Of a stretch of DNA of 64,000 bases, positions 5,899 to 28,900 are shown in pieces. Position numbers and translations under genes: made by a program. The notes under the pieces are model-generated. The model saw only the letters and a list, made by a program, of their open reading frames with translations. It made no database searches and had not been told where the DNA came from. The first letter of the stretch is position 1. The number at the start of each line of letters is the position of its first letter. Source of the DNA: Phallusia mammillata (lineage: Eukaryota); the NCBI GenBank assembly GCA_965637545.1, contig OZ281500.1:2914001-2978000 (forward strand), read 5' to 3'.

Positions 5899-8800
5899 GT
5901 CATTGAACACCGAGCAGACGTGGCGAGACTTCAACTTATGCTAGAGGTCGGAGGGATTTACTTGGACACCGACAGTGCGATTTTACGAAATGTTGACGAA
6001 CTCCGCAACTATTCAATGCTCTTAAGTGAATCCAACTATAACTCGCTCGGTTAGAGCCATTCAATTTTTAACCGTGTTTTTAAGTTGTTTATAGTGAATC
6101 GTAACTTGCAGAAACGCTTTTTAACTTGTTGTTAGCCTTATTTTATAATACATACAGTTGGGTGAAAAATAAAAGTCACGCAAATCTAAAAAGACAAAAA
6201 AGTGACCAAAAACTTGGTTGTCCAGTCGGTAAATTATCCACCTGGATAAAACGCCTGTTTATTTGAGCCAAAGCGAACATAGCGTAAAGTTACTTCACTT
6301 TTCTTTGAAGTAATCAACATTTTCACTGGCACAAATCGCTCTTTGATAAACTAATGTCGTTAAAGCAATCTTTTTCAACCTTTTTTTCAAAACGAGGCAT
6401 CTTTTTTCTACTGGTAAAATTTTGCCGCACTTCACTAACTAAAACTATTAACTGATGACAATTATGTGCGCACAATTTTTAACTGGAAAAAGCCAGAAAT
6501 CAAGCAATAATTAGACTGCAATTGTTACCTCGCCAGCCGTACCTTAACTTGGCCTAAAGCCTCATCGCTTTGAAAAGTAACATGATTTTTTTATTTCTAA
6601 AGGCACACAAGTCAAAAATCACTTGGTTAAAGAATATGTGATTTGATTATATATCCTAATTATTACTGAGGGCAATAAGAATCCTCTGTATCTTTTAGTC
6701 AAAATTCAAAAGCGTATATCTGTGTTTTTTCATTTACAGCAAATGGAATTATTTTCGCCAACAGAAAAGCCTGGTTTCTGCGACGATGGTATCACGAATA
6801 CAGATACTTCAAAGATGCTGCGTAAGTTTTTATTTACCGTTGGATTGTGTGTAAATACAACTGAACATTTCAGTGTTGTAAACAGGCTCTAAACATACGC
6901 CCCAAACACGAAAATACAACCAAAAACCCATACTTTTCAATGATGAATGTTGAATTGAATTCACAAAAATAAACTAATTTGTGACATATGTGTTGTGGTC
7001 AAGATGCAGTGAAGTGTGTCAATATCGATTTCTATTAGTTGTGGCGTGGTGATTGTCGTGTCTCGTGTCGTTTACCGTACGTTTTACACGAGGCACCTTA
7101 CAGTTATTGCGTAATTCCTTTTCGTGTCAGTTTTTGCAGTGCATAGGACTGTTAATTAGCATTGTATAAGGTTTATTATTGTAAAGGTAGTTGTGTGTAA
7201 GGTAACTACAGTGGATTAGAGTGTACTAGTTGATGTATGGATAATTTAAATGTGTGTGATAATCTGACCATGCTAGTCGTATATACCTTTTATCTTTTTC
7301 TCGTGTTAGTAGCTTAACTAAATTCTCTATTTTGTATTTCTATTTGAATAAGACACTAAGCAATGTAAATCTGTGTGGGAGCTGCTAACGCAGAAATCTG
7401 TTCTGTTGTGACTGTCTCGATTGATTCTGATCTGTCTTGTTTGTCCTGACTATCTGCTGTATCTTAGACTGTACTAAACTGTACTGTTATGAACTGTCCA
7501 GTTTTGTTGTACTGTGGTACTCGGTATTGGAATACAGCCTTCGTTTTATTGCTGCAACATATCAGTGTGACAGACAGCATTTGGCGGTGCAAGTAACCCA
7601 CACAGTGGCCAGTTAGAAAGCTAGCTGGGACGTGGAATCCGAACCAAAGGGTTTTGTATTCTACATAATTTCTGCGTCACAGTTTGTATTGCGCACAAAC
7701 TGTCACATTGCATCAAGTACCTGTTATACTGCACAACATGGATGAAAGAAATTCAGATGAGATGAACTCCAAGAGCAGCCATTCATCTGTTACAAGATCA
7801 AGACTTCTTAAGTTACAAATTGAAGAGCAGAAAAGAAGAAATGAGCAGCAGATTGAACAGGAACAAATTGAACTGGAACTCCAGGAAAAGAAGATGCAAA
7901 GGCAGATGGAACTGGAACTTCAGGAAAAGAAAATGCAACTGGAACAAAGGATAGAAGAAAATCGTGCACATTTGCGCAGGCAAAGGCTTAAGATGACAAA
8001 TGAACTGCAGGCTATGGTCTCAGAAAATAAAAGAGCTGAGATTTTATCCCAAGCAGGCTCTAGACCGGTATCGAGAGCAGACTCTTTAACTGATGAAAGT
8101 CCTTTGGTTAAAAATCGGGTAGGTCCTTACCAAATCAAAGATTTCTGCAAAACTCCAGTGGTACAATTAAATGCAGATGCAGATGTTTTGCCCGGACCTG
8201 TTAATATCTCACAGGAAGTAATGCCACAAGTAGTGCAAGAAGAAAACTTACCACAACCGACATGTCAATTTATGCCACAACATAATGCAAACGGACATGT
8301 TTATGGCCCTAACTTTTACCCTGTTTCACCACTTTATCCAAGTTACACTGAACCCAGTGTTTCTTACCCCACTCCCAACTACAATAATCCTCCTGTTACC
8401 AAGTACCCGCCTGTGCCCATTCCTACCTACCCCATACCCACTGTACCTAGTGCTCAAACCAATCCTCATCAAGAATCGAAGACAGATTCCCATTTTCTGA
8501 AAGCCATGAAAACAATTACAAAATCTATTAACAATGGGTTTTCAATGCCCAAAATCAGCATGCCAAAATTTAATGGCGATCCATTGAAGTACACTGAGTT
8601 TATGCAGAAGTTTGATGCAAACATAGCTAGCCAACATGAGCAAGATGAATTCAAGCTACTGTACCTTAGTGAAATGTGTGAGGAAAAGGCAAAAGATCTT
8701 ATATCAACTTGTGGTTTAATGAAGAACCCCAGTGAAGGATATACAGATGCAAGAAACAAGCTTTATCAACATTTTGGTCAACGGCATATTGTAATCAGTG

Positions 8801-11800
8801 CTCACATCAACAACCTAATAAATGGTCCAGTGATCAAACCAAATGACATTGAAGGCCTTGGTGTACTATCCAGGCCAATCCAAAACACACTTAATATATG
8901 CCAAGAATTAAATTCGTTGTCAGATGCAAATAACCAAGTATACCTTGGAAAGGTGTTTAACAGGCTTCCATACCATATGCGTGTTAAATATGCAAACAAA
9001 TGTACCAATTTGTATAGAGAAGGAAAATCGCCAGACTTTCGGCACATGACAGAATTTGTAGTTAACAAAGACGTTGGCTGCAATACATTTTATGGAAAGT
9101 TGCTGGCTGAAACAAAGGCGCCAGCTACAAGACCAAATCGAACAACAAAAATTGGAGCATTTTCAACTGTGGCTTCTGTTGAAACAAGTTCCAACATCAA
9201 GGAGAAAACTGGCACTTCAGTTGTTTCCCAAGTTACAAGAAGACAGCCAGAACTATGTCCTGACTGTAATAGCAATCACCCACTATGGAAATGTTTACAG
9301 TTTAAAGCAAGAACTGTGCAAAAGAGAGCAGAACTTGTTAAAAGGCAGAACCTTTGCTTCAATTGTTTGGGTTCGAATCATTTTATTGCTGAGTGCAAAA
9401 GTGAAAGAAGATGTCAAGTTGAAAACTGTCATGGGAAGCACCACACATTGTTGCACCAACAGAAAAGCTATCATCAAAGAGATGAAATACCGGGGTCCAG
9501 CAGGTTAAGTGGGGCCGGAGCCAACCAAGTAGAAAGAAGAACGAATACATTGCAACAGAACCCCAGTGGGGCCGGAGCTGACATCACTTCCGGTGGCATA
9601 TCATGCAATCTACCAGCCAAAGCAAAGGTTAGACTTAAAGTGGTCCCTGTATGTGTGTGGACAAATGATAAGAGTAAGTTCATTAATACTCATGCATTCC
9701 TTGATGAAGGATCAAATCATTCTCTTTGCACTCTAAGTCTTATGCAAAAATTAAGGACCAATGGAACTGGGAAAAGGTTCTCAGTGTCTACTGTCAACGC
9801 ACAGCGCCAATATTATGGTGTTCATGTAAAGCTTCATGTTCAGGGGATTGGTGAATATACCCCATACTTTCTTCATGATGTGTTGGCAATTCCTAAATTG
9901 CCAGATGTTAAAGGAAGCATCCCAGTTCAAAGTGAAGTTAGTCATCATCGTCACCTTAATTCAATTCATTTCCCCCAGTTGTCACATAATGATGTTGACT
10001 TGCTCATTGGGGCTGACATGATGGAACTGCACATCCAAAGGGAGACTGCAGCTGGAGAACCAGGGTCACCTCTTGCAATTCGGACTGGTCTTGGATGGGC
10101 TTTATTTGGGCATGACTGCAAATCATCAAGCGATGATCAAGTAAAAATAAACTCACTGTACTGACACCATACAAAATCAATTTCAAAGAATGTATGATAG
10201 TGACTTTCAAGACCTCAATTCGCATGACAAGTTACACCATTCTATTGATGACAGAAGAGCATTAAAAATAATGCAGGATTCTATTAAAATGGTAAATGGA
10301 CATTACGAAGTTGCTTTACCTTGGAAGTCAGAAGAAGCTAAACTGCCATACAACCGTTTAATGGCAGAAAGGAGGCTTACTTACCTCAATAAAAGATTTA
10401 TTAAGGATGAAGAACTTTTTGGCAAATACTGTTGTAAAATAAAGGAGCTTTTGGACTGTGGATTTGCAAAAAGAGCACCTCATGTTAAAACCCAAGGAAG
10501 AACATGGTATATTCCACACCATTCTACTGGTCAGAAGTTTAAGGTAGTATTCGATTGTGCTGCAAAGTTCCAAGATGTTTCACTCAATGATCAGCTTCTT
10601 CAAGGGCCTGATCACACTAACAAACTGGTTGGTGTACTTCTTCGCTTTCGTCAAGAAAGAATAGCTATTGTTGCAGACATTAAAGGGATGTTTCACCAGG
10701 TCAGGGTCAACCCAAAGGATCACGATGCACTATGCTTTCTTTGGTGGCCAAATAATGATATGACACAACCACCCGTTGACTTTCAAATGGTAGTACACTT
10801 ATTTGGTGCTACCTCTTCACCTAGTTGTGCTGGATTCGCCTTGCTACAAGTAGCCAAAGATAATCTACTTCAAGCTGATGAGACCACTCTGCAAACTGTC
10901 AAACACAATTTCTATGTGGATGACTGTTTGAAGTCAGTAGCTACCCCTGATGAAGCTATAAAGCTTGTAAAAAATCTTGCTGACCTACTTCACTGTGGTG
11001 GATTTCATTTAACAAAATACCTCAGCAATGATCGAGATGTTATAGCCTCAGTACCTGAAGTCGACAGAGCCAGGGCCACTTTAAATCTTGATTTGGATGA
11101 AATGCCAGTTGAACGTGCTCTTGGCGTCCAGTGGAATACTTCTAGTGATCAATTTGAAGTTCAAGTGAACATCAAACCTAAGTCAGCCACCCGACGGGGT
11201 ATACTGTCTATGTTGAGTCAAATATATGACCCATTGGGCTTTGTGCAGCCATTTATGCTTCCGATCAAGAGGCTCATGCAAGACTTGTGGGATCATGACT
11301 TAGGATGGGATGAGCAGATTAAAGATCGTCATTTGAAGGTTTGGAATCAGTGGCTGCAACTTTTACCCAATCTGGAGACTGTGTCAATTCCAAGATGTTT
11401 AAAGCCTATGCATGCAGAAGTAAAAGTATATCAAGTGCATTGTTTTTGTGATGCCAGTAATGTAGGATATGGAGCCGTGTGTTATCTCCGTTCAAAGGAT
11501 CCATTGGGCAAATGTTGCTCATTTCTGATGGGTAAAGCAAGAGTTACCCCCAAAAAGCCAGTAACAGTTCCAAGGTTGGAATTAACTGCTGCCGTTATTG
11601 GTGTGAAGTTGACCCAATAATAATAAGAAGAATTGGAATACAAAATTGATGATACCGTCTACTGGACAGATTCTACATCAGTGTTGCAGTACATTAGAAA
11701 CAAAAGTGCTCGTTTCCAGACATTTGTTGCCAATCGATTGTGTATGATACAAGAAGCCTCACAATGCCGTCAGTGGAGACATGTGCCAACTGAGAAAAAT

Positions 11801-14800
11801 CCAGCAGATATTGCCTCCCGTGGTTTGATGCCTGACAAAGTAAAACGAGCTGCAATGTGGTTTAAAGGACCAGCCTTTTTGCATGAAGATGAGGAGCACT
11901 GGCCTTCCAGACCTGCTTCTTTGCCTGCTCTGAGTGATGATGACCCTGAATTAAGGAAAAGTCCAAAGATTTTTGCTTCTATTGTGGCAAAGGACACCAA
12001 TCCAATGCAATCACTTTTTGACTACTTCTCCCAGTGGAACAAGCTTCAAACTAGTGTAGCTTGGTTTTGTCGATTTAAGCAGTACTTGCACTGGAAACAT
12101 ACTGGGCAATCCAAGCCAGTCTCTGGCAATCTAGTGCCAAAAGAATTACGCAAAGCAACCACAGACATTATCAAGTTTGTACAGTATCAGGAGTATGGAT
12201 CTGAGTTCAACAAAGTTAATGATTTGCAATCAAAGGCTCAAATGAGGAACCTAAACAAGTTGAAAAATATTCACAAGCTTAATCCTGTCATGATCGATGG
12301 AGTTTTATGTGTCGGTGGGCGCCTGCAATTGTCTAATTTGTCAAATGATGCTAAACATCCAATTCTGCTACCATATACATCACATGTAACTCACCTAATC
12401 ATTGATGCCTTCCATAAAAGGAGTGGACACAGTGGAACACTTCACGTACTTGCAAGAATTAGAGAGCATTTCTGGATTGTAAAGGGACATTCAGCTGTTC
12501 GCCAGGTGCTAAGAAGATGCACAAAGTGTGGGCAATACAATGCAAAGATTGGTGTTCAGATAATGGCACCTCTGCCCTCATCAAGGTTAACTCCTGGGCA
12601 TCCACCATTTTACCACACTGGTCTAGATTATATGGGCCCAATTCTGGTTAAAGTTGGCGGCAGCCAAGCCAAAAGATATGGCTGTATCTTCACATGCATG
12701 GCTACTCGAGCAGTGCATATCGAGATAGCCTACTCATTGGATACTTCCTCCTTCTTACAGGTTTTTCGCAGATTTGTCAATCGACGAGGATATCCCCAAC
12801 ACCTGTACAGCGATAATGGTTCCAACTTTGTGGGTGCTGAGCGAGAGCTACAAAGTGCACTGAACCAATGGAACCAGTTGCAGATCCACAACCACTGCTG
12901 TCAGCATGGAACAGAGTGGCACTTCAACCCACCTGCCTCTAGTCACCAAGGAGGAGTGTGGGAGAGAATCATTCGATCGGTTCGCAAGATTCTAAGAGGT
13001 CTAGCAGGGGAAAGGACTTTGAGTGATGAGTCACTCCATACATTTATGGTGGAAGTTGAGAGAATCCTCAATGACCGTCCACTCACTTCCTTGAGTGATG
13101 ATCCAATAGATTTGGATGCCCTGTCACCAAACTCTTTACTGATTAGAAGACTACAACCTGGTCTTCCACCTGGACATTTTGTGAAAGCAGATGGTTATCG
13201 GAAATCCTGGAAACATGTCCAGTTTCTGGCAGATGCTTTCTGGAAGAGATGGTTGAAGGAATACCTGCCTCTATTGCAGCTCAGACAAAAATGGCTGCAA
13301 CCACAACGCAACTTCAAGAAGGGTGATCTCGTGCTGATGGTCGATGAGAACAATCCACGTGGAGCCTGGCCAAAGGCGCTGATTGAGGAGACATTTCCGG
13401 ATGGCGAAGGAGTTGTTCGAAGAGTTCGAATTCGCACAGCGAATTCTTCCTACCTGAGGGACATTCGTAAAATATGCTTGCTGGAGGAAGCTGCCTGATA
13501 GCAGCTTTGATATGTGAATGTCTGTTGCATCTTGACCCTATTATGTTGTAAATAATTTCATTTGTTCAATTATTGGGGCCGGTATGTTGTGGTCAAGATG
13601 CATTGAAGTGTGTCAATATCGATTTCTATTAGTTGTGGCGTGGTGATTGTCGTGTCTCGTGTCGTTTACCGTACGTTTTACACGAGGCACCGTACAGTTA
13701 TTGCGTAATTCCTTTTCGTGTCAGTTTTTGCAGTGCATAGGACTGTTAATTAGCATTGTATAAGGTTTATTATTGTAAAGGTAGTTGTGTGTAAGGTAAC
13801 TACAGTGGATTAGAGTGTACTAGTTGATGTATGGATAATTTAAATGTGTGTGATAATCTGACCATGCTAGTCGTATATACCTTTTATCTTTTTCTCGTGT
13901 TAGTAGCTTAACTAAATTCTCTATTTTGTATTTCTATTTGAATAAGACACTAAGCAATGTAAATCTGTGTGGGAGCTGCTAACGCAGAAATCTGTTCTGT
14001 TGTGACTGTCTCCATTGATTCTGATCTGTCTTGTTTGTCCTGACTATCTGCTGTGTCTTAGACTGTACTAATCTGTACTGTTATGAACTGTCCAGTTTTG
14101 TTGTACTGTGGTACTCGGTATTGGAATACAGCCTTCGTTTTATTGCTGCAACATATCAGTGTGACAGACAGCATTTGGCGGTGCAAGTAACCCACACAGT
14201 GGCCAGTTAGAAAGCTAGCTGGGACGTGGAATCCGAACCAAAGAGTTTTGTATTCTACATTATGCAGCTACATAATTTAATTTTTTTTTTAATTTAAATT
14301 TAACTTTTTCTTAAATTACCATCCAGGTAAAGAAATATACATTAAGACACGAACCGAAAGAGTTTAATAAACCTATAAACTCGTATAACACAGGGAATCA
14401 ACAATTGCGCTCAAGCTGACTCGTAAAACACAATAGCGTTGGTGAAACGGTCTTTATTAAAACAGCCTTGTTATTTCAACTCCGTTACGGTGTATTGGCT
14501 TCTGATGAATGTGGGTTCACATTTTACCGTCCTAAATTTTCTGAGCAAAAACAACACGAGCCATTACGTTGGAGGAAAACACTACAGCATTTTCATCTCA
14601 GTTTCTGTCCCGTTCCATTCCAGCGAATAACGCCAACAGCAGCGATGTAATTTCCGTCCTTATTCAAGCGCCCACCTGTATAACGCAGTGTTATACACAT
14701 GCCGATAAAGGTGTGCTGTGTTACAACAGAAGGGCAACTGCAGCGGCTGTCACCATTAAACTAAACAGTTGTATTTAATTAAAAGAGTGCATAAATCACA

Positions 14801-22900: not shown

Positions 22901-25900
22901 TTAATATTTTTGCTAGTTTCAGCAGAAGACCATCATGCCATACTGTATCATAGGCAGCTGATAAATCTACAAATATGGCTCCAGTTGTAGTTTTTAGTTC
23001 ATAACCCGTTTAATGTGTGATGTTAAAGCCAGGACTTGTTCACTGGTACAACGTTGTTTTCTGAACCCAGATTGTTCAGGAGGTAGGAATGGTTTGATTA
23101 TTGGGGTAATTCTGGCAAGGGGATGATTCTTTCCAATACTTTGTAGGTGCAGCATAGAAGAGAAATTGGCCTGTAGCTGCTTGGTTTGGTTGGATCGTTT
23201 GTTGGTTTCAGGATTGCTATCACTTTAGTTGTTTTCCAATCTTTGGGGAGTTTTCCGGATGGAATAATGTCTGTCAGTGCGTTCCTGAGCCATTAAAAGC
23301 TTTAGTAGCTCTTTTATTTCTGACATTAGTGTGTGTGATGACAGGTTAGAATCGTCGGTGTATGTGTGGTATAACTTAGTTGATGGTATTCTTTCCTTAC
23401 ATATCTTTCGAAAGTGTGGTTTGGTCGATACTGTTCTCGTTGTTTGATTTCCTTTGCGATTTTGTTTGCACTGATCGGAGCTGCAGTTTTGGGCATTGAT
23501 GTTGAATTCGGGTCCAGTTCATGTAAAAGTGTCCATGCTTTACGACTTGAATGCTTGAAGTCAAGATTTTCAACTATGTTCATCCATCTCCTATCTTTAT
23601 TAAGCGATGATAATAGTAGGTCTGCTGTGTTATTGTCTTGTTTTTAATCCAACTGTAATTATTATAGGCCGGTGTTGGCTGTGTGGGAAGGTGGGCAGCA
23701 TTTCTGTAGTTGCTGGCAATGCATTAAGTTCATCGTTTTTGGAAACGAGACATCGAACTTTTGAGTAATCTTTGTTCCATCTTGAGGAATGAAAGGTACC
23801 CTGGGTTTTGCTGGGGTCTTATAGTAGATGAAGATTTGTGTCATTTATCCATTGTCCTAATTGTTCGCCTGCTTTGTCATTTTCATTATACTACCATTCG
23901 GTGTTGTGGCTGTTAAAGTCCCTAATGTAAATAGTGGGCTGAGGAAAGGGTGGAAGAGGAGGATTCGGCCATTGTTTGTTTGGTGGTTTGTACAAGTTAA
24001 CAACAGTTAGTTCATTGATTTTTACTGTCGATCTGTGAATGTTGTTGCATGTTATAACTTAGTCCAATTTTGTTGCTGTAGAAGGGTTTTTGGCATAGGT
24101 GCAGATCTCGCATTTGTCATGGCAGATTTTAGATATGATAGTGTACCCTGGTATTCGGGTCTTTGATTCCGGTGATGTTGCTGTAGCGTTGGTTTCTTGG
24201 AGTAGAGCGATGTCGACTTTATGTTGCTCGAGGATTTTCTCAAGATATTCGCATTTGGACATTTAACTTCCTTCGATGTTAAGTGATAGGATCTTTGTCT
24301 GGTTGCAGAGTTCCATGGAGCCTAACTTATTTTTCAAACCTGCTGGGCTCTGTAGGTTGTCAGCAGGAACGCGAACGTTTTTATTCTGGGCCACGTTCGA
24401 TCCAGCATTTTGTTTCTTTTCTTTGTGACGCATCATAGTAAGTAAGGTGATTATTCAGAGACGTGTACCCAGGATGACGCATTGTTGTTTGGGTACCTGG
24501 TTGGACTCGATCTTAGTGATTGTAAGCCCCTACACCAACGACAAGGTGTCGAGTCCCATAGTAAGGGACTGTTATGGTAAACGTATTTTACGTATTTTAT
24601 CTTATTTATAAAATATTGTTATGGTAAACGTATTTTATAAATAAAAACAATATGTCCGAAAACGTTTGACAAAGCATGTCGTTCATTTAATAATGTAGAC
24701 TATTCTAATACTTGGTACTTAAAAAAACACTCTTGTAAATAATTTCCCCAAAACTGTTCGTTTAAACGTTATGTTATGAACCATGTAATATTGTTGTAGT
24801 CATTTTGCCCTTGTCGTGTTTACAGATAGCTGAAGTTCAACAGGAGATTTCAAATTTGTCCTACAAAGTTCCAAATCTCATTCATTACATCTGGTTTGGC
24901 TGCAACCGAATGCGTGTTGACCATTATATAACGTAAGAAAGACCTGAGTATTAAATCTTTAATTCATTTTTTTTGGTATTGCCATTAGTAAGGGTCGATA
25001 CTAAATTAATATGACTCTTATCTGACAGAAAATCTAACCTAGTACGTATAAAGCTCAGCTAACTTTTTTGCCCTGCTTCATATACTTTAAGGGCAGTCGT
25101 TATTTTGTGACTCGGGCTTGATATTTAGCCTACGTTTCAGAGTTGTAAGTTAAATTCGGAACTGTAGCGGTCACATGCAATAGCGTAGAACGTAGGGCAA
25201 ACGGATGCATATGCCACATTTTCCCACACTATATGACGCGCGCTCTAAAAAATAAATAAGAAGCAGGGCCTGCGTTAGTTTAGAAAAGACTAAGCTGTTT
25301 AATTTAACTTAAAGCTTCAGAATTAGAAATTTTAACAGTGACTAGAATATGATAATTTCTGTTTAATTTAAGGCTTCTGAATTCGAAAATTTAACAGTGA
25401 TTAGAAAGTGATACCGTCTTTTTAATTTAATTTAAGGCTTCTGAATTCGAAAATTTAACAGTGATTAGAAAGTGATACAGTCTTTTTAATTTAATTTAAC
25501 GCCTCTAGAATTAGAAATATCAACAGCAGATAGGAAATTATAAAGTTGTAGTTTAACTTGAAGTTTCCGAATTAGAAATGTTAACAGCAGCTAGGAAATT
25601 CTAAAGTTGTAATTTAATTTGAAGTTTCTGAATTAGAAATATCAACAGCAGATTGGAAATTGTAAAGTTGTAATTTAACTTGAAACCCCTCTGGATTTAG
25701 AAATTCTAACGGCAACTTGGAAAATTATAAAGTTTTAATTTAACCCGAAGCCTTTGGGCTTAGAAATTTTAACAGCGACTAGGAAAATTATAAAGTTCTA
25801 ATTTAACTCGAAAGCGCCTGGATTTTGCGACCAGCGACCCATAAGGTCTAATTAAAACAAATTAGATCATCTGTTAATTAAACATTGATAAACTAGTGCC

Positions 25901-28900
25901 TTCCCTATAAGGGGCTAGTGTCAGCGCTAATATTTACTAGAATAAAAACATGTTTAGTTAGGTTTTAGTAAGGAGATTAATACAGGTTTAACGGCTTTTC
26001 CTTTGTCTTTCTTTGCAACACTAGTTATTAATTGCTGTTAATGTTAATTGGATTCTATTTGAATAAGTGGATTCTATTTGAATAAGTGGATTCTATTTGA
26101 ATAAGTGGATTCTATTTGAATAAGACTTCTTGAAACATCTCTGTCGCTGGAAACCAAAATAAACCAACAGTGTAGTCAACGGATTATACAAGTGGTGTTT
26201 TCTGGAGTTTATCTCCAAGGAATCTTGATGCAGCAGTTTGAACTATAAACTTAGTGAGACTCCTAGCGCAAACCTATTGCGTTGTTAATTCGTGAGAGTA
26301 GCATCACCAGTCCTTGAAAACCGCGCAAGAACTCCCGCAGAACCGAACTCATTTTTTTGTATTAAAGCCCGAAATAAGCCGAAACCGAACAAAATTACGA
26401 CATGTATATAGTGCCATGTGGTGGTGAATGCTTGGTGACCGACTGGTTCGGTATGACGTCTTTAATAGGCCTGGAGTAGCCTACTGCGATTTATTTGTGA
26501 GTGTGCTGTGATCGCTGGTCTGCATAGACGCTTAAGGGCTGATCCCAGTGTTGAATATGTGTTCATCTTAACTAAGCTATACCAGGTTGCTCCCACCAAG
26601 CACTCACAGTAATTATATCGACAAGCACGTTGTCTGCACATGGCCAGTAATATACAAACATTGTGTACGTTTGAGACCTAAGTCGTTTAGGGCTAGTTTT
26701 AAAAACTACAAGAAAAGATTTTTATCAATACTTATATGTTTGTACTTGTAGTTTTAAATAAATATAGATTTTTTTGCACCATGTCCACATTTTAACTTCG
26801 AAAAGTAATTATAGCCTACACGTCACTTTTATGTACTTTCTCATCTGCAAGTTGACTAATGGCAAGTTAACTGTCTTTTATTTTGATTTCATCAAGGATC
26901 TTAGGAGCTTTGCGGTATCAGAAGCCTCGTCTCATCCTCATCCACGGAGACTGCGCTCCATCCGGGGAGTACTGGGAGCGATTGATGAAGCAGGGAGGAG
27001 AGAAGATTCGTCTCGTTCGGAGGACTCCACCAGAAATAATATGGAGTATCCCCATCAAGGTATGTTATATAGCCGGGCTACTCAATTAGGTTTGTCATAG
27101 ATCCAGATACAAAAAGGTCAAAATCAACGAGGTCCGGACACATCTGTCAGTCGTAGTCAATTTTGGTTGTAACTAATCGTGGTCCAACATAAACACAATT
27201 GTGAAAGCCGCATGTATGTCAGCAAAACAAACGCTTGTATCAGACACTAAACTGTAATTTACTCTTTGCAAAAGTATGGCACAACATACAAAACACATTT
27301 TATCTAGTTTTGTAGGAACACTTTGGCAATGATTCAAAATTAAGTTTATTACGTCACAGATAAAATTATGGGCAAACAATGGCCGTTTTGTTAATTTTTT
27401 GGTGAAATAATGAACCATTTTTTCGTCACAGTTTCACAATCTGACCTCACTTAAGATCTTTGAAAGCTTTAGCTGTCGTAATTCCCCCCAAAAATCTGTT
27501 TTTTTTTCAATTAGGCCAAGAGCAAATTGAAATTCAATGTAAGTGAAACTCAAATATATGATCTCTGTATTCAAAAGTCTTATAACCTTGTTTGTTTTTT
27601 TTGATTTTGTTTTTTAGTTTGCAACCACTACCCACAGTTAGACTCCAGCTATCAGTTTTGAAAAACACTTTATATCACTGGTGAAACCTTCCACTTAATA
27701 AGCTGACAGTTTGTATACACACATGTTTGTCCAGGTCATTGAACACCGAGCAGACGTGGCGAGACTTCAACTTATGCTAGAGGTCGGAGGGATTTACTTG
27801 GACACCGACAGCGCAATTTTACGCAATGTTGACGAACTCCGCAACTATTCAATGCTCTTGAGTGAATCCAACTATAACTCGCTCGGTTAGAATCATTTAC
27901 TTTTTATTAACTGTGTTTTTAGTTGTTTGGCGAATCGTAACTTGTAGAAACTCTTTTTAACTTGTTGTTAGCCGAACCTGTTTTTAATGCATACAGTTAA
28001 ATAAAAAGTAAAAGTGAAGCAAATCTAAAATAGCAAAAAAAAACTTGTTGTCCAGTCTGTGCATTCTTGACCTTCTTGATAAAATATCTGTTGATTTGAG
28101 CCAAAGCGACCATAGCGTAAATTTAGTTCATTTTTCTTTGAAGTAATTTTACAATTTATATTTTTACTGGAACAATTCCTTCTTGTGAGGAAATGACAAA
28201 TGGATTTATAAAGTGTTTTTCAGCCTTTTTTGTGCCAAAAACAGAAATCAAGCAATATGTAGGCTGTAATCGTTGCCTCGAAAGTGTATTGTAACTTGGC
28301 CTAAAGCCATATCGATCTAAAAAGTAATAAGATTTTTTATGATTTATAAAAACATCAAAATCATTTGGTTAAAGAATATGATTTGGCTATATTATCCTAA
28401 TCATTACTGAGGGCAATAAGAACCCCTTGCAACTTTCTATTAAAATTTAGAAACTTGTCTTTGTTTTCTTATTCACAGCAAATGGAATTATCTTCGCCAA
28501 CAGAAAAGCTTGGTTTCTGCGACGATGGTATCACGAATACAGATACTTCAAAGATGCTGCGTAAGTTTTTACCGTTGGATTGTGTGTAAATATGCGGGGG
28601 CTCGCGCGGTATTCAAGACGTTCAAACTGCTGCCTCATATTCCTTAGAAATAAACTCCAGAAAACACCACTTGTATAATCTGATCTTCCGAAGATAATTC
28701 TGCGTAGCTGGCTAAAATAGTATCCACTGTGGCGACAACTGGGTGTTTCCCCAAACTGCGTTAATCAGTCACACGTAACCGAACCGCACAATACGTCACG
28801 TGCCTTTTTCCATTTGCAAGGTGTCTTATTTTGTTCTTTCTGTCTTGTGTTCTTTTTTTCTTTTTTTTTTATTACGATAACAAGTAAAATGAGAAAGAAT

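What the first reader, a model, noticed from the sequence alone, without database searches (positions are those of the whole stretch)
7336..7352. Spliced leader built into both LTRs of a BEL/Pao element: a possible self-renewing trans-splice acceptor
Seen: ATTTCTATTTGAATAAG (SL plus one extra T; a 15-nt exact match at 7338-7352 and 13932-13946) sits mid-LTR after a U-rich tract. The family is unrelated to the solo LTR at 25163, so the trait appears twice independently in 64 kb. Inference: the SL ends in AG and can itself act as the trans-splice acceptor. Trans-splicing would then replace the outron with the same sequence, so the 5' and 3' R regions stay identical and minus-strand transfer still works while the RNA gains the SL cap. 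I recall SL-like sequence being noted in nematode BEL elements but cannot verify it; I know of no such description for chordates.
Basis: partly seen in the sequence, partly recalled or inferred. Interest (0 to 1): 0.8.

Follow-up and report, generated by a model that had tools for sequence, protein, structure and literature searches.

The report
Host spliced leader inside retrotransposon LTRs
A sea-squirt jumping gene of the BEL/Pao type carries, in both of its terminal repeats, a DNA copy of the 16-base leader that the host normally adds only to RNA, most likely a relic of its own RNA having been leader-tagged before it was copied back into DNA; the same has been reported for Pao elements of a nematode.

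Summary
ATTTCTATTTGAATAAG, the ascidian spliced leader (SL) plus one T, lies at 7336-7352 and 13930-13946. That is position 346 of the two 676-nt LTRs of a 7.3-kb BEL/Pao element (6991-14260, TSD TATG).

It is not chance. The genome has 3,860 exact SL 16-mers and none of the reversed control. 2,887 are SL RNA genes, so up to about 970 are dispersed.

The LTR matches only the mature SL exon. It starts at SL base 1, ends at the splice-junction G, and its flanks are unrelated to the SL RNA gene. This points to capture from spliced RNA by reverse transcription.

About 12 insertions of this family carry the site: 4 exact, 7 with the extra T, 1 with an extra C. A second BEL/Pao family (43% pol identity, LTRs unalignable) and several other repeats also carry the SL, some of them between a TATA-like box and AATAAA.

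My reading: the SL marks the U3/R border and is now inherited as DNA. The RNA data were contigs only. The heritable +T variant, absent from all SL RNA genes, argues weakly against renewal.

Brugia malayi Pao elements with SL1 on both sides (PMC7181701) are a published precedent. Earlier notes of this scan report SL-tagged LINE and Penelope-type copies on other DNA of this genome.

The parts
6987..6990 (+). Target-site duplication TATG, left copy
   Evidence: TATG directly precedes the 5' LTR and directly follows the 3' LTR (14261-14264).
6991..7666 (+). 5' LTR (676 nt, TGTTG...CTACAT)
   Evidence: direct repeat of 13585-14260 with 6 differences.
7300..7400 (+). Conserved LTR core around the SL. 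It includes the motif TAGCTTAACTAAA (7310-7322), the pyrimidine tract, the SL, and ACACTAAGCAATGTAAATCTGTGTGGGAGCTGCTAACGCAG.
   Evidence: nearly invariant in about 20 family copies and still recognisable in relatives of 72-78% identity (L023-L025; L141). Sequence beyond 7400 varies between copies.
7323..7335 (+). Pyrimidine-rich stretch resembling the first 10 bases of the SL (ATTCTCTATTTTG). It may be an older, truncated SL copy or a polypyrimidine tract.
   Evidence: In the diverged relative L141 the SL follows TTAACTA directly, without this stretch.
7336..7352 (+). SL copy in the 5' LTR: the SL 16-mer with one extra T after base 1. It contains the only AATAAA-like hexamer of the LTR (AATAAG, 7347-7352) and ends in AG.
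   Evidence: Other family copies hold the exact SL or an extra C at the same spot.
7739..10164 (+). gag-like ORF (DUF1759), ATG at 7739
10190..11620 (+). pol part 1 (RVT_1, Peptidase_A17), in another frame than gag
11633..13498 (+). pol part 2 (Integrase_H2C2, rve, DUF5641), same frame as part 1 and separated from it by an in-frame stop at 11618-11620
13585..14260 (+). 3' LTR
13930..13946 (+). SL copy in the 3' LTR, identical to the copy at 7336-7352
14261..14264 (+). Target-site duplication TATG, right copy

Best explanation
The 17-mer is a reverse-transcribed copy of the host's mature spliced leader, and it sits at the border between U3 and R of the LTR. In an ancestor of this BEL/Pao lineage the genomic RNA was SL trans-spliced, or otherwise began with the SL. 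Minus-strand strong-stop cDNA copied the SL as the extreme 5' end of the RNA. After strand transfer the SL was fixed between U3 and the rest of R, and plus-strand synthesis then placed it in both LTRs. Since then it has been inherited as ordinary DNA, mutations included (extra T or extra C). It lies inside the most conserved core of the LTR, where it probably now serves the element's own RNA ends. Its first bases fit an initiator (A+1 TTCT) and its AATAAG is the only poly(A)-signal-like hexamer in the LTR, 18 nt upstream of a GU-rich TGTGTGGG. Shown: the sequence, its exact exon boundaries, its presence in both LTRs, its spread across unrelated families, and the inheritance of the variants. 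Inferred: the U3/R position, the trans-splicing origin, and any present function.
For: (1) The match is limited to the SL exon. SL RNA genes read ...AAAACGGC|SL|GTAAGCATCATAC..., whereas the LTR reads ...TATTTTGT|SL|ACACTAAGC..., with no shared flank. The copy therefore came from spliced RNA, not from gene DNA. (2) It is in both LTRs, on the same strand, at the same offset. (3) About 12 independent insertions carry it, and LTR pairs always share the state: exact/exact, +T/+T, +C/+C. (4) It recurs in unrelated elements. A second BEL/Pao family, L136, has 43% pol identity, unalignable LTRs, and an exact SL in both identical LTRs. The window's solo LTR has four tandem SLs. Families A to D are further cases. 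(5) In families A and C a TATA-like box lies about 25-35 nt upstream of the SL and AATAAA 12-35 nt downstream, which is the anatomy of an R region that starts with the SL. Among contexts without the hammerhead-like tail, 13 of 55 have AATAAA or ATTAAA within 60 nt downstream, against 4 of 55 in a control window. (6) The base just before dispersed SL copies is G in 41 of 74 independent contexts, against a background of 18.5%. This is what reverse transcription through a cap would leave. (7) Published precedent: B. malayi PAO elements with SL1 on both sides, interpreted the same way. (8) Family contigs in RNA-type runs include one that begins at SL base 2 (X5). This fits the model but does not prove it.
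Against: No read-level evidence shows that this element's RNA begins with, or is spliced to, the SL. Contig ends can equally arise from branching between the exact and +T variants. There is no TATA box 25-35 nt upstream of the SL in this family; the TATATA at 7281 is 55 nt away and is absent from most copies. The poly(A) site is unmapped and the LTR has no canonical AATAAA, so the R boundaries are inferred. Getting a non-templated 16-nt 5' extension through minus-strand transfer needs a mismatched or microhomology-primed step that nobody has demonstrated.
Confidence: 0.6

Rival explanations
1. One reading: the genomic SL is a live, self-renewing trans-splice acceptor. Transcription starts upstream of 7336. 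The host SL is spliced onto the AG at 7351-7352, replacing the outron with the same 16 bases. The 5' and 3' R therefore stay identical and strand transfer still works, while the RNA gains the SL and its cap. In a variant of this model, poly(A) is added at the same AG in the 3' LTR, as at Ciona operon boundaries, so that R is the SL itself.
For: AG at 7351-7352 follows a tract that is 83% pyrimidine. A branch-point-like TTAAC/ACTAAA lies 31-35 nt upstream of the AG, and about 20 nt upstream in relative L141. The terminal AG is kept even in relatives whose SL has decayed. In C. intestinalis, poly(A) addition and trans-splicing use the same AG at operon boundaries (PMC1488885). Two deeply diverged BEL/Pao families both keep an exact SL although their LTRs are otherwise unalignable. 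An X5 contig starts at SL base 2.
Against: The +T state occurs in 7 independent insertions and +C in one, and both LTRs of each pair agree, yet 0 of 2,887 SL RNA genes carry +T. A full copy of a trans-spliced 5' end would reset both LTRs to the exact SL. Caveats: strand transfer may occur before the last 1-2 bases are copied, and a +T SL variant was seen on 4 ESTs in C. intestinalis. The -3 base is A and -5 to -7 are purines, so the 3' splice site is weak. Contigs in RNA-type runs X1 and X3 run from U3 through the SL into gag unspliced, though contigs may merge 5' and 3' LTR reads. C. elegans Cer1 genomic RNA is not trans-spliced at its SL1 site.
Confidence: 0.22
2. Whatever its origin, the SL copy is kept only because it supplies cis signals to the LTR: an initiator at its 5' end, an AAUAAG poly(A) signal at its 3' end, or a TOP-like or SL-mimicking leader for translation. 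It would have no continuing link to trans-splicing.
For: The SL lies in the most conserved 100 nt of the LTR. AATAAG is the only AATAAA-like hexamer in the LTR, and a GU-rich block follows 18 nt later. In family A the AATAAA downstream of the SL looks like a mutated SL tail (TTGAATAAAC). The literature suggests that the Ciona SL may act as a TOP element (PMC4691747).
Against: This does not explain why the exact host sequence, with exact exon ends, appears independently in unrelated LTR, LINE and Penelope-type elements. Diverged relatives let the 5' half decay (L023-L025). None of the proposed signals has been tested.
Confidence: 0.1
3. The match is chance similarity of AT-rich, acceptor-like sequence, or a DNA-level capture of part of an SL RNA gene.
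For: The sequence is AT-rich and the genome is about 64% A+T.
Against: There are 3,860 exact copies against 0 for the reversed control and 6 against 0.19 expected in the window. No SL RNA gene flank is shared.
Confidence: 0.02

Closest known systems
SL1-flanked PAO (BEL/Pao) LTR retrotransposons of Brugia malayi (Foster et al. 2020, Nat Commun 11:1964; PMC7181701)
   Same: The retrotransposon superfamily is the same. The host SL is found outside SL RNA genes, on both sides of the element and on the same strand. The authors drew the same inference: spliced leaders were added to expressed Pao RNA and integrated with it.
   Different: That host is a nematode with the 22-nt SL1; this is a chordate with a 16-nt SL. 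The paper scores SL1 only as lying within 1 kb of the element. Here it is placed precisely inside both LTRs, in a conserved core, in at least two deep BEL/Pao lineages plus other LTR families, sometimes in tandem.
Relict spliced leaders of dinoflagellate retrogenes (recycling of processed cDNAs; cited in PMC12014239 and from my own knowledge of Slamovits and Keeling 2008)
   Same: DNA-encoded SL copies mark the 5' ends of reverse-transcribed, trans-spliced RNAs. Tandem and truncated SL relics occur there as well. They are seen here in family A and in the window's solo LTR.
   Different: Those are cellular retrogenes, not LTR elements. Their relics are truncated at an internal AG of the SL, which the ascidian SL lacks.
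C. elegans Cer1 (Ty3/gypsy) SL1 trans-splicing (PMC3315495)
   Same: RNA of an LTR retrotransposon is a substrate for SL trans-splicing.
   Different: Only the spliced 2.4-kb subgenomic mRNA gets SL1, and the 8-kb genomic RNA does not. That paper does not report an SL1 copy in the LTR.
SL-gene-specific non-LTR elements (SLACS, CZAR, CRE in trypanosomatids; NeSL-1 in nematodes), from my own knowledge
   Same: Retroelements physically associated with SL sequence.
   Different: Those elements insert into SL RNA genes and gain SL sequence by DNA position. Here the SL is inside the element and shares no flank with the SL RNA gene.

Membership tests
BEL/Pao LTR retrotransposon | Pao-type aspartic peptidase (Peptidase_A17) with RT, integrase and the C-terminal DUF5641, plus DUF1759 in gag | tested here: met
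   Peptidase_A17 at 3e-42, DUF5641 at 3e-28, Integrase_H2C2, rve, RVT_1 and DUF1759.
BEL/Pao LTR retrotransposon | Long terminal direct repeats starting with TG and holding CA one base from the end, flanked by a short target-site duplication | tested here: met
   676-nt LTRs with 6 differences, TGTTG...CTACAT, TSD TATG.
SL-tagged retrocopy (cDNA of an SL-bearing RNA) | The match covers the SL exon only, starts at SL base 1 and ends at the splice-junction G, and is not followed by the SL RNA intron | tested here: met
   the exon is followed by ACACTAAG, not GTAAGCAT, and the upstream flank is unrelated. One inserted T in this copy; exact in 4 insertions of the family.
SL-tagged retrocopy (cDNA of an SL-bearing RNA) | The source RNA is shown to carry the SL at its 5' end | tested here: inconclusive
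   only contigs were available. One contig begins at SL base 2, but branching between variants would give the same end.
SL-flanked PAO elements as in Brugia malayi | The host SL on the same strand at both ends of a Pao-type element, away from SL RNA gene arrays | tested here: met
   copies at 7336 and 13930, both on the + strand. The SL RNA arrays listed lie on contig C3 of this assembly; the window is on C7.
Functional SL trans-splice acceptor | AG preceded by a polypyrimidine tract and a branch-point-like motif | tested here: met
   83% pyrimidine at 7323-7345, with TTAAC/ACTAAA 31-35 nt upstream of the AG.
Functional SL trans-splice acceptor | Pyrimidine at -3 (YAG), which I take as the usual 3' splice-site consensus from my own knowledge | tested here: not met
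   AAG, with purines at -5 to -7.
Functional SL trans-splice acceptor | Reads joining the SL to the base after the AG, without upstream genomic sequence | not testable with these tools
   no raw-read RNA run is served for this organism, and the single read-laying run returned contigs.
SL RNA gene | SL followed by a GT donor and the conserved intron (GTAAGCATCATACTCC...TTTTTT), in tandem arrays | tested here: not met
   the genes form 553-bp arrays. The LTR copy has no GT and no intron.

The most novel reading that the evidence does not exclude
LTR retrotransposons of an SL trans-splicing chordate have made the host's spliced leader the 5' end of their R region, or the whole of it. The primary transcript starts upstream. 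The host SL is spliced onto the SL copy's own AG, and poly(A) may be added at the same AG in the 3' LTR as at Ciona operon boundaries. The RNA would then gain a host-type 5' end and cap while keeping the terminal redundancy needed for minus-strand transfer. This would be a convergent adaptation shared with nematode Pao elements.
Probability: 0.2. Interest if true: 0.85.

Novelty: new member of a known kind. Interest (0 to 1): 0.55.

Why it matters
If the reading is right, the SL is a built-in marker of the 5' end of the RNA that these elements copy back into DNA. It would show that SL-tagged RNAs of LTR elements are competent templates for reverse transcription in a chordate. Earlier notes of this scan suggest the same for LINE and Penelope-type elements.

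The parallel with Brugia Pao elements suggests that BEL/Pao elements repeatedly come to terms with SL trans-splicing hosts. It also poses a concrete question: how does a retroelement that needs identical RNA ends survive a host that replaces 5' ends? The +T and +C copies offer a natural test, because DNA-templated and trans-spliced 5' ends differ by one base.

There is a practical side too. Up to about 970 genomic SL copies can mislead pipelines that call trans-splice sites or TSSs by trimming the SL.

Tried and rejected
RNA evidence:
- Both run searches returned only Logan contigs, with 'RNA' only guessed.
- The one read-laying run shows family contigs in three RNA-type runs. Contig ends and U3-SL-gag continuity can be explained by de Bruijn branching and by merging of 5' and 3' LTR reads. 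I take no conclusion on TSS, splice junction or poly(A) site from it.
- All RNA-type contigs replace 7406-7466 with 83 other bases, so sister copies are represented rather than this copy.

Protein routes to transcript contigs:
- The exact gag product is not on record.
- A search with gag found only distant relatives of 23-30% identity.

Phylogeny of the LTR copies:
- The backbone is unresolved. The number of switches between exact, +T and +C cannot be counted, so I make no claim of repeated resetting.

Variant SL RNA gene as the source of the extra T:
- No SL RNA gene carries it.

Rfam:
- No family matched the 553-bp SL RNA gene unit.
- There was no hammerhead hit on the SL-plus-tail loci, only spurious miRNA hairpins on the palindromes.

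The bacterial promoter/terminator scan is irrelevant here.

Similarity between the BEL post-SL sequence and the hammerhead-like tail is at background level (score 5 against a background median of 6).

Literature:
- Nine full-text searches found no report of SL copies in LTRs of tunicates.
- Matsumoto et al. 2010 is not held.

Full report
**What is there**

The window lies at C7:2,914,001-2,978,000 of a 240-Mb assembly. The sequence at 7336-7352 is ATTTCTATTTGAATAAG and is repeated identically at 13930-13946. It is the ascidian spliced leader ATTCTATTTGAATAAG (sequence as in PMC1488885) with one extra T after the first base.

The two copies lie at offset 346-362 of two 676-nt direct repeats, 6991-7666 and 13585-14260. 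These differ at 6 positions, run from TGTTG to CTACAT, and are flanked by the 4-bp duplication TATG. Between them are three ORFs:
- a gag-like ORF with DUF1759;
- an ORF with RVT_1 and Peptidase_A17;
- an ORF with Integrase_H2C2, rve and DUF5641.

This is a BEL/Pao element. A frame change lies between gag and pol, and pol holds one in-frame stop at 11618-11620.

**Not chance, and not a piece of an SL RNA gene**

- With up to two mismatches the window has 6 matches against 0.19 expected.
- The genome has 3,860 exact 16-mers and none of the reversed control.
- 2,887 of them are followed by GTAAGCAT and sit in 553-bp tandem arrays, for example at C3:11.1 Mb. These are the SL RNA genes, reading SL|GTAAGCATCATACTCCTCGGAGTAACTTTTTTCC.
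- Up to about 970 copies therefore lie elsewhere. Extrapolating from contig C1, where 85 of 86 copies are non-genic, gives about 560.
- In the LTR the similarity to the gene covers only the 16-base exon. Upstream is TATTTTGT rather than AAAACGGC, and downstream is ACACTAAGC rather than the GT intron.

A copy that begins at SL base 1 and stops at the splice-junction G is what a cDNA of a mature SL-bearing RNA would contain. A DNA-level capture would not be cut so exactly.

**The family**

A genome search with 7200-7667 found about 20 LTR copies, which amount to about 12 independent insertions.
- Four insertions have the exact SL.
- Seven have the extra T.
- One has an extra C at the same place.
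- The two LTRs of every pair share the same state: window +T/+T, L005/L009 +C/+C, L006/L014 and L007/L016 exact/exact.

The SL lies inside the best-conserved 100 nt of the LTR (about 7300-7400). This core is still recognisable in relatives of 72-78% identity (L023-L025) and in L141, where the SL has one to three changes. In L141 the SL follows the motif TTAACTA directly. In the window's family a 13-nt stretch resembling the first ten SL bases (7323-7335) lies in between, possibly an older, truncated copy.

The tree of LTR copies is star-like apart from the pairs, so the order of the three states cannot be resolved. The outgroups have the register of the exact SL. None of the SL RNA genes carries the extra T.

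**Generality**

I fetched the first 99 non-array SL copies listed for contigs C1 and C2. They fall into 74 independent contexts. One is a decayed SL RNA gene copy.

- *A second BEL/Pao family.* L136 has 705-nt LTRs that are 100% identical, each with an exact SL at position 215. Its pol is 43% identical to the window's, and its LTR cannot be aligned with the window's.
- *Family C.* This is the window's solo LTR at 25163-26339. It carries four tandem units of TGG plus SL at 26049-26124; other copies carry one or two.
- *Family A.* A full SL is followed by one to three truncated or degenerate SL copies and then AATAAACAAAC.
- *Anatomy in families A and C.* A TATA-like box lies about 25-35 nt upstream of the first SL and AATAAA 12-35 nt downstream of the last. 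That is the anatomy of an R region that begins with the SL.
- *Poly(A) signals.* Over the 55 contexts without the hammerhead-like tail, AATAAA or ATTAAA occurs within 60 nt downstream in 13, against 4 in a control window.
- *The preceding base.* It is G in 41 of 74 contexts against a background of 18.5%. Reverse transcriptases are known to leave such a G when they copy a cap (my own knowledge).
- *A shared tail.* About 20 contexts share a roughly 35-nt tail after the SL (CTGATGA, a short GC hairpin, GAAA, an AU-rich palindrome) and then diverge. Rfam did not confirm it.
- *A LINE.* Another note (s1-405475) reports a LINE beginning with the SL. I did not test it.

Taken together, the BEL LTR appears to be the LTR-element version of a genome-wide habit: retroelement RNAs carry the host SL when they are copied into DNA.

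**How the SL would get into both LTRs (inference)**

In LTR elements R is defined by the RNA ends.
1. If the RNA 5' end is the SL, minus-strand strong-stop DNA ends with its complement.
2. Once such a cDNA completes strand transfer, the new LTR reads U3-SL-rest of R-U5.
3. Plus-strand synthesis then copies this arrangement into both LTRs.

The first capture needs priming from a mismatched or microhomology-paired 3' end, which is unproven. Afterwards the SL is present in the 3' R and transfer is unhindered. On this reading U3 is 6991-7335 and R begins at 7336.

The R/U5 border is unknown. The LTR has no AATAAA, ATTAAA or AGTAAA. The SL's own AATAAG, followed 18 nt later by TGTGTGGG, is the best candidate signal. 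Relatives have AGTAAA a few bases further on.

The idea that the SL's AG is itself a trans-splice acceptor, so that splicing replaces like with like, is coherent.

It gains some colour from C. intestinalis operons, where poly(A) is added at the very G of the acceptor AG (PMC1488885). R could then be the SL itself. The site has a pyrimidine tract and a branch-point-like motif at a suitable distance.

I could not test it. All runs for this organism are kept as contigs. The single read-laying run gave:
- in X1, a contig running from 7276 through an exact SL into gag;
- in X3, a U3-deletion variant joined to an exact SL and gag;
- in X5, a contig that starts at 7338, the second SL base;
- in the DNA-type run X8, about 15% of depth lacking the extra T.

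Each of these can be produced by graph branching between the exact, +T and +C variants, or by merging 5' and 3' LTR reads. None is evidence for or against splicing.

The one discriminating observation is genetic. A strong-stop cDNA copied to the end of a trans-spliced RNA would reset both LTRs to the exact host SL. Yet +T is carried by seven insertions and +C by one, always in both LTRs, and no SL RNA gene encodes +T. The last cycles of these lineages therefore used a DNA-templated 5' end.

Two caveats apply. Transfer may occur before the last one or two bases are copied. A +T SL variant was seen on 4 ESTs from 4 genes in C. intestinalis. The AAG acceptor with purines at -5 to -7 is also weaker than the usual YAG.

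I put the renewal model at about 0.2 and the fossil-now-templated model at about 0.6.

**Comparison with what is known**

In Brugia malayi, 120 SL1 copies lie outside SL1 gene arrays and 60 of them are within 1 kb of PAO elements. Some elements have SL1 on both sides on the same strand. The authors concluded that spliced leaders were added to expressed PAO RNA and integrated with it (PMC7181701). That is the same kind of thing in the same superfamily.

C. elegans Cer1 shows SL1 trans-splicing of a subgenomic RNA but not of the genomic RNA. Dinoflagellate retrogenes show tandem SL relics. Nine full-text searches found no description for tunicates or any other chordate.

I therefore file this as a new member of a known kind. 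The added points are:
- precise placement inside the LTR core;
- at least two deep BEL/Pao lineages plus other LTR families;
- tandem and truncated relics;
- a natural one-base marker that could settle the mechanism.

**Limits**

- TSS, splice junction and poly(A) site are all unmapped.
- The survey covers 99 of the dispersed copies, from two contigs.
- Only BEL/Pao was confirmed by protein domains, so the superfamilies of families A to D are not established.

Noticed in passing
window 26049-26124 (solo LTR 25163-26339): There are four perfect tandem units of TGG plus the exact SL (period 19). A TATA-like TTATTAAT lies about 25-30 nt upstream and AATAAA about 33 nt downstream. Other genomic copies of this LTR family (L056, L079, L080, L111, L119) carry one or two SLs, and the 1-3 bases before the SL vary (TTAATTAC, TTAATTACG, TTAATTGG).
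   Followed up: partly
L037, L055, L057, L063, L074, L077, L082, L084, L109, L113, L121 (contig C1/C2 loci): About 20 of 74 independent dispersed SL copies are followed by a shared tail of about 35 nt: 2-4 variable bases, then ACTGATGATGCC, a short loop, and AGGCGAAATATATA. After the tail the sequences are unrelated. The tail has the CUGAUGA...GAAA core of a minimal hammerhead ribozyme, as in Penelope-like elements. Rfam gave no hammerhead hit.
   Followed up: partly
L077 (G000:C1:17160131-17160746) and L037 (G000:C1:2319118-2319733): These are perfect inverted repeats of 40 bp or more, centred on the 5' end of the SL. They could be head-to-head element dimers or hairpin-primed cDNA. Unexplained.
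   Followed up: no
L034, L035, L036, L072, L076, L117 (family A): In this long repeat a full SL is followed by 1-3 truncated or degenerate SL copies and then AATAAACAAAC. The poly(A) hexamer itself looks like a mutated SL tail (TTGAATAAAC). TATTAAT lies about 35 nt upstream of the SL.
   Followed up: partly
L031, L088, L092, L116, L118 and L099 (family B): Similarity between copies ends 15-21 nt after the SL. The SL is followed by C and an A-rich run (C plus ten A in L099), as if an RNA that ended just after the SL had been retro-copied with its tail.
   Followed up: no
G000:C3:11,108,338 to about 11,193,360 and elsewhere (L135): The SL RNA genes number 2,887 copies of SL|GTAAGCATCATACTCCTCGGAGTAACTTTTTTCC in 553-bp tandem units, interrupted by gaps of 4.7-9.7 kb that may be insertions. 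No Rfam family matches the unit.
   Followed up: partly
L136 (G000:C2:2525846-2535746): This second BEL/Pao family has 705-nt LTRs that are 100% identical (787-1491 and 7687-8391), long gag and pol ORFs, and an exact SL at LTR position 215. Its pol is 43% identical to the window's. AGTAAA lies 35 nt after the SL and AATAAA lies near the LTR end.
   Followed up: partly
74 independent SL contexts: The base before the SL is G in 55% of contexts against an 18.5% background, mostly as TG or AG. The base after the SL is G or A in 86%.
   Followed up: partly
PMC1488885, Table 1 (C. intestinalis oligo-capped ESTs): The SL variants recorded on mRNAs include ATTTCTATTTGAATAAG (4 ESTs, 4 genes) and GTATTCTATTTGAATAAG (3 ESTs, 3 genes). 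The first equals the window's +T form. The second equals the exact-SL copies of this BEL family read from 2 nt upstream. Such ESTs might be genome-templated transcripts.
   Followed up: no
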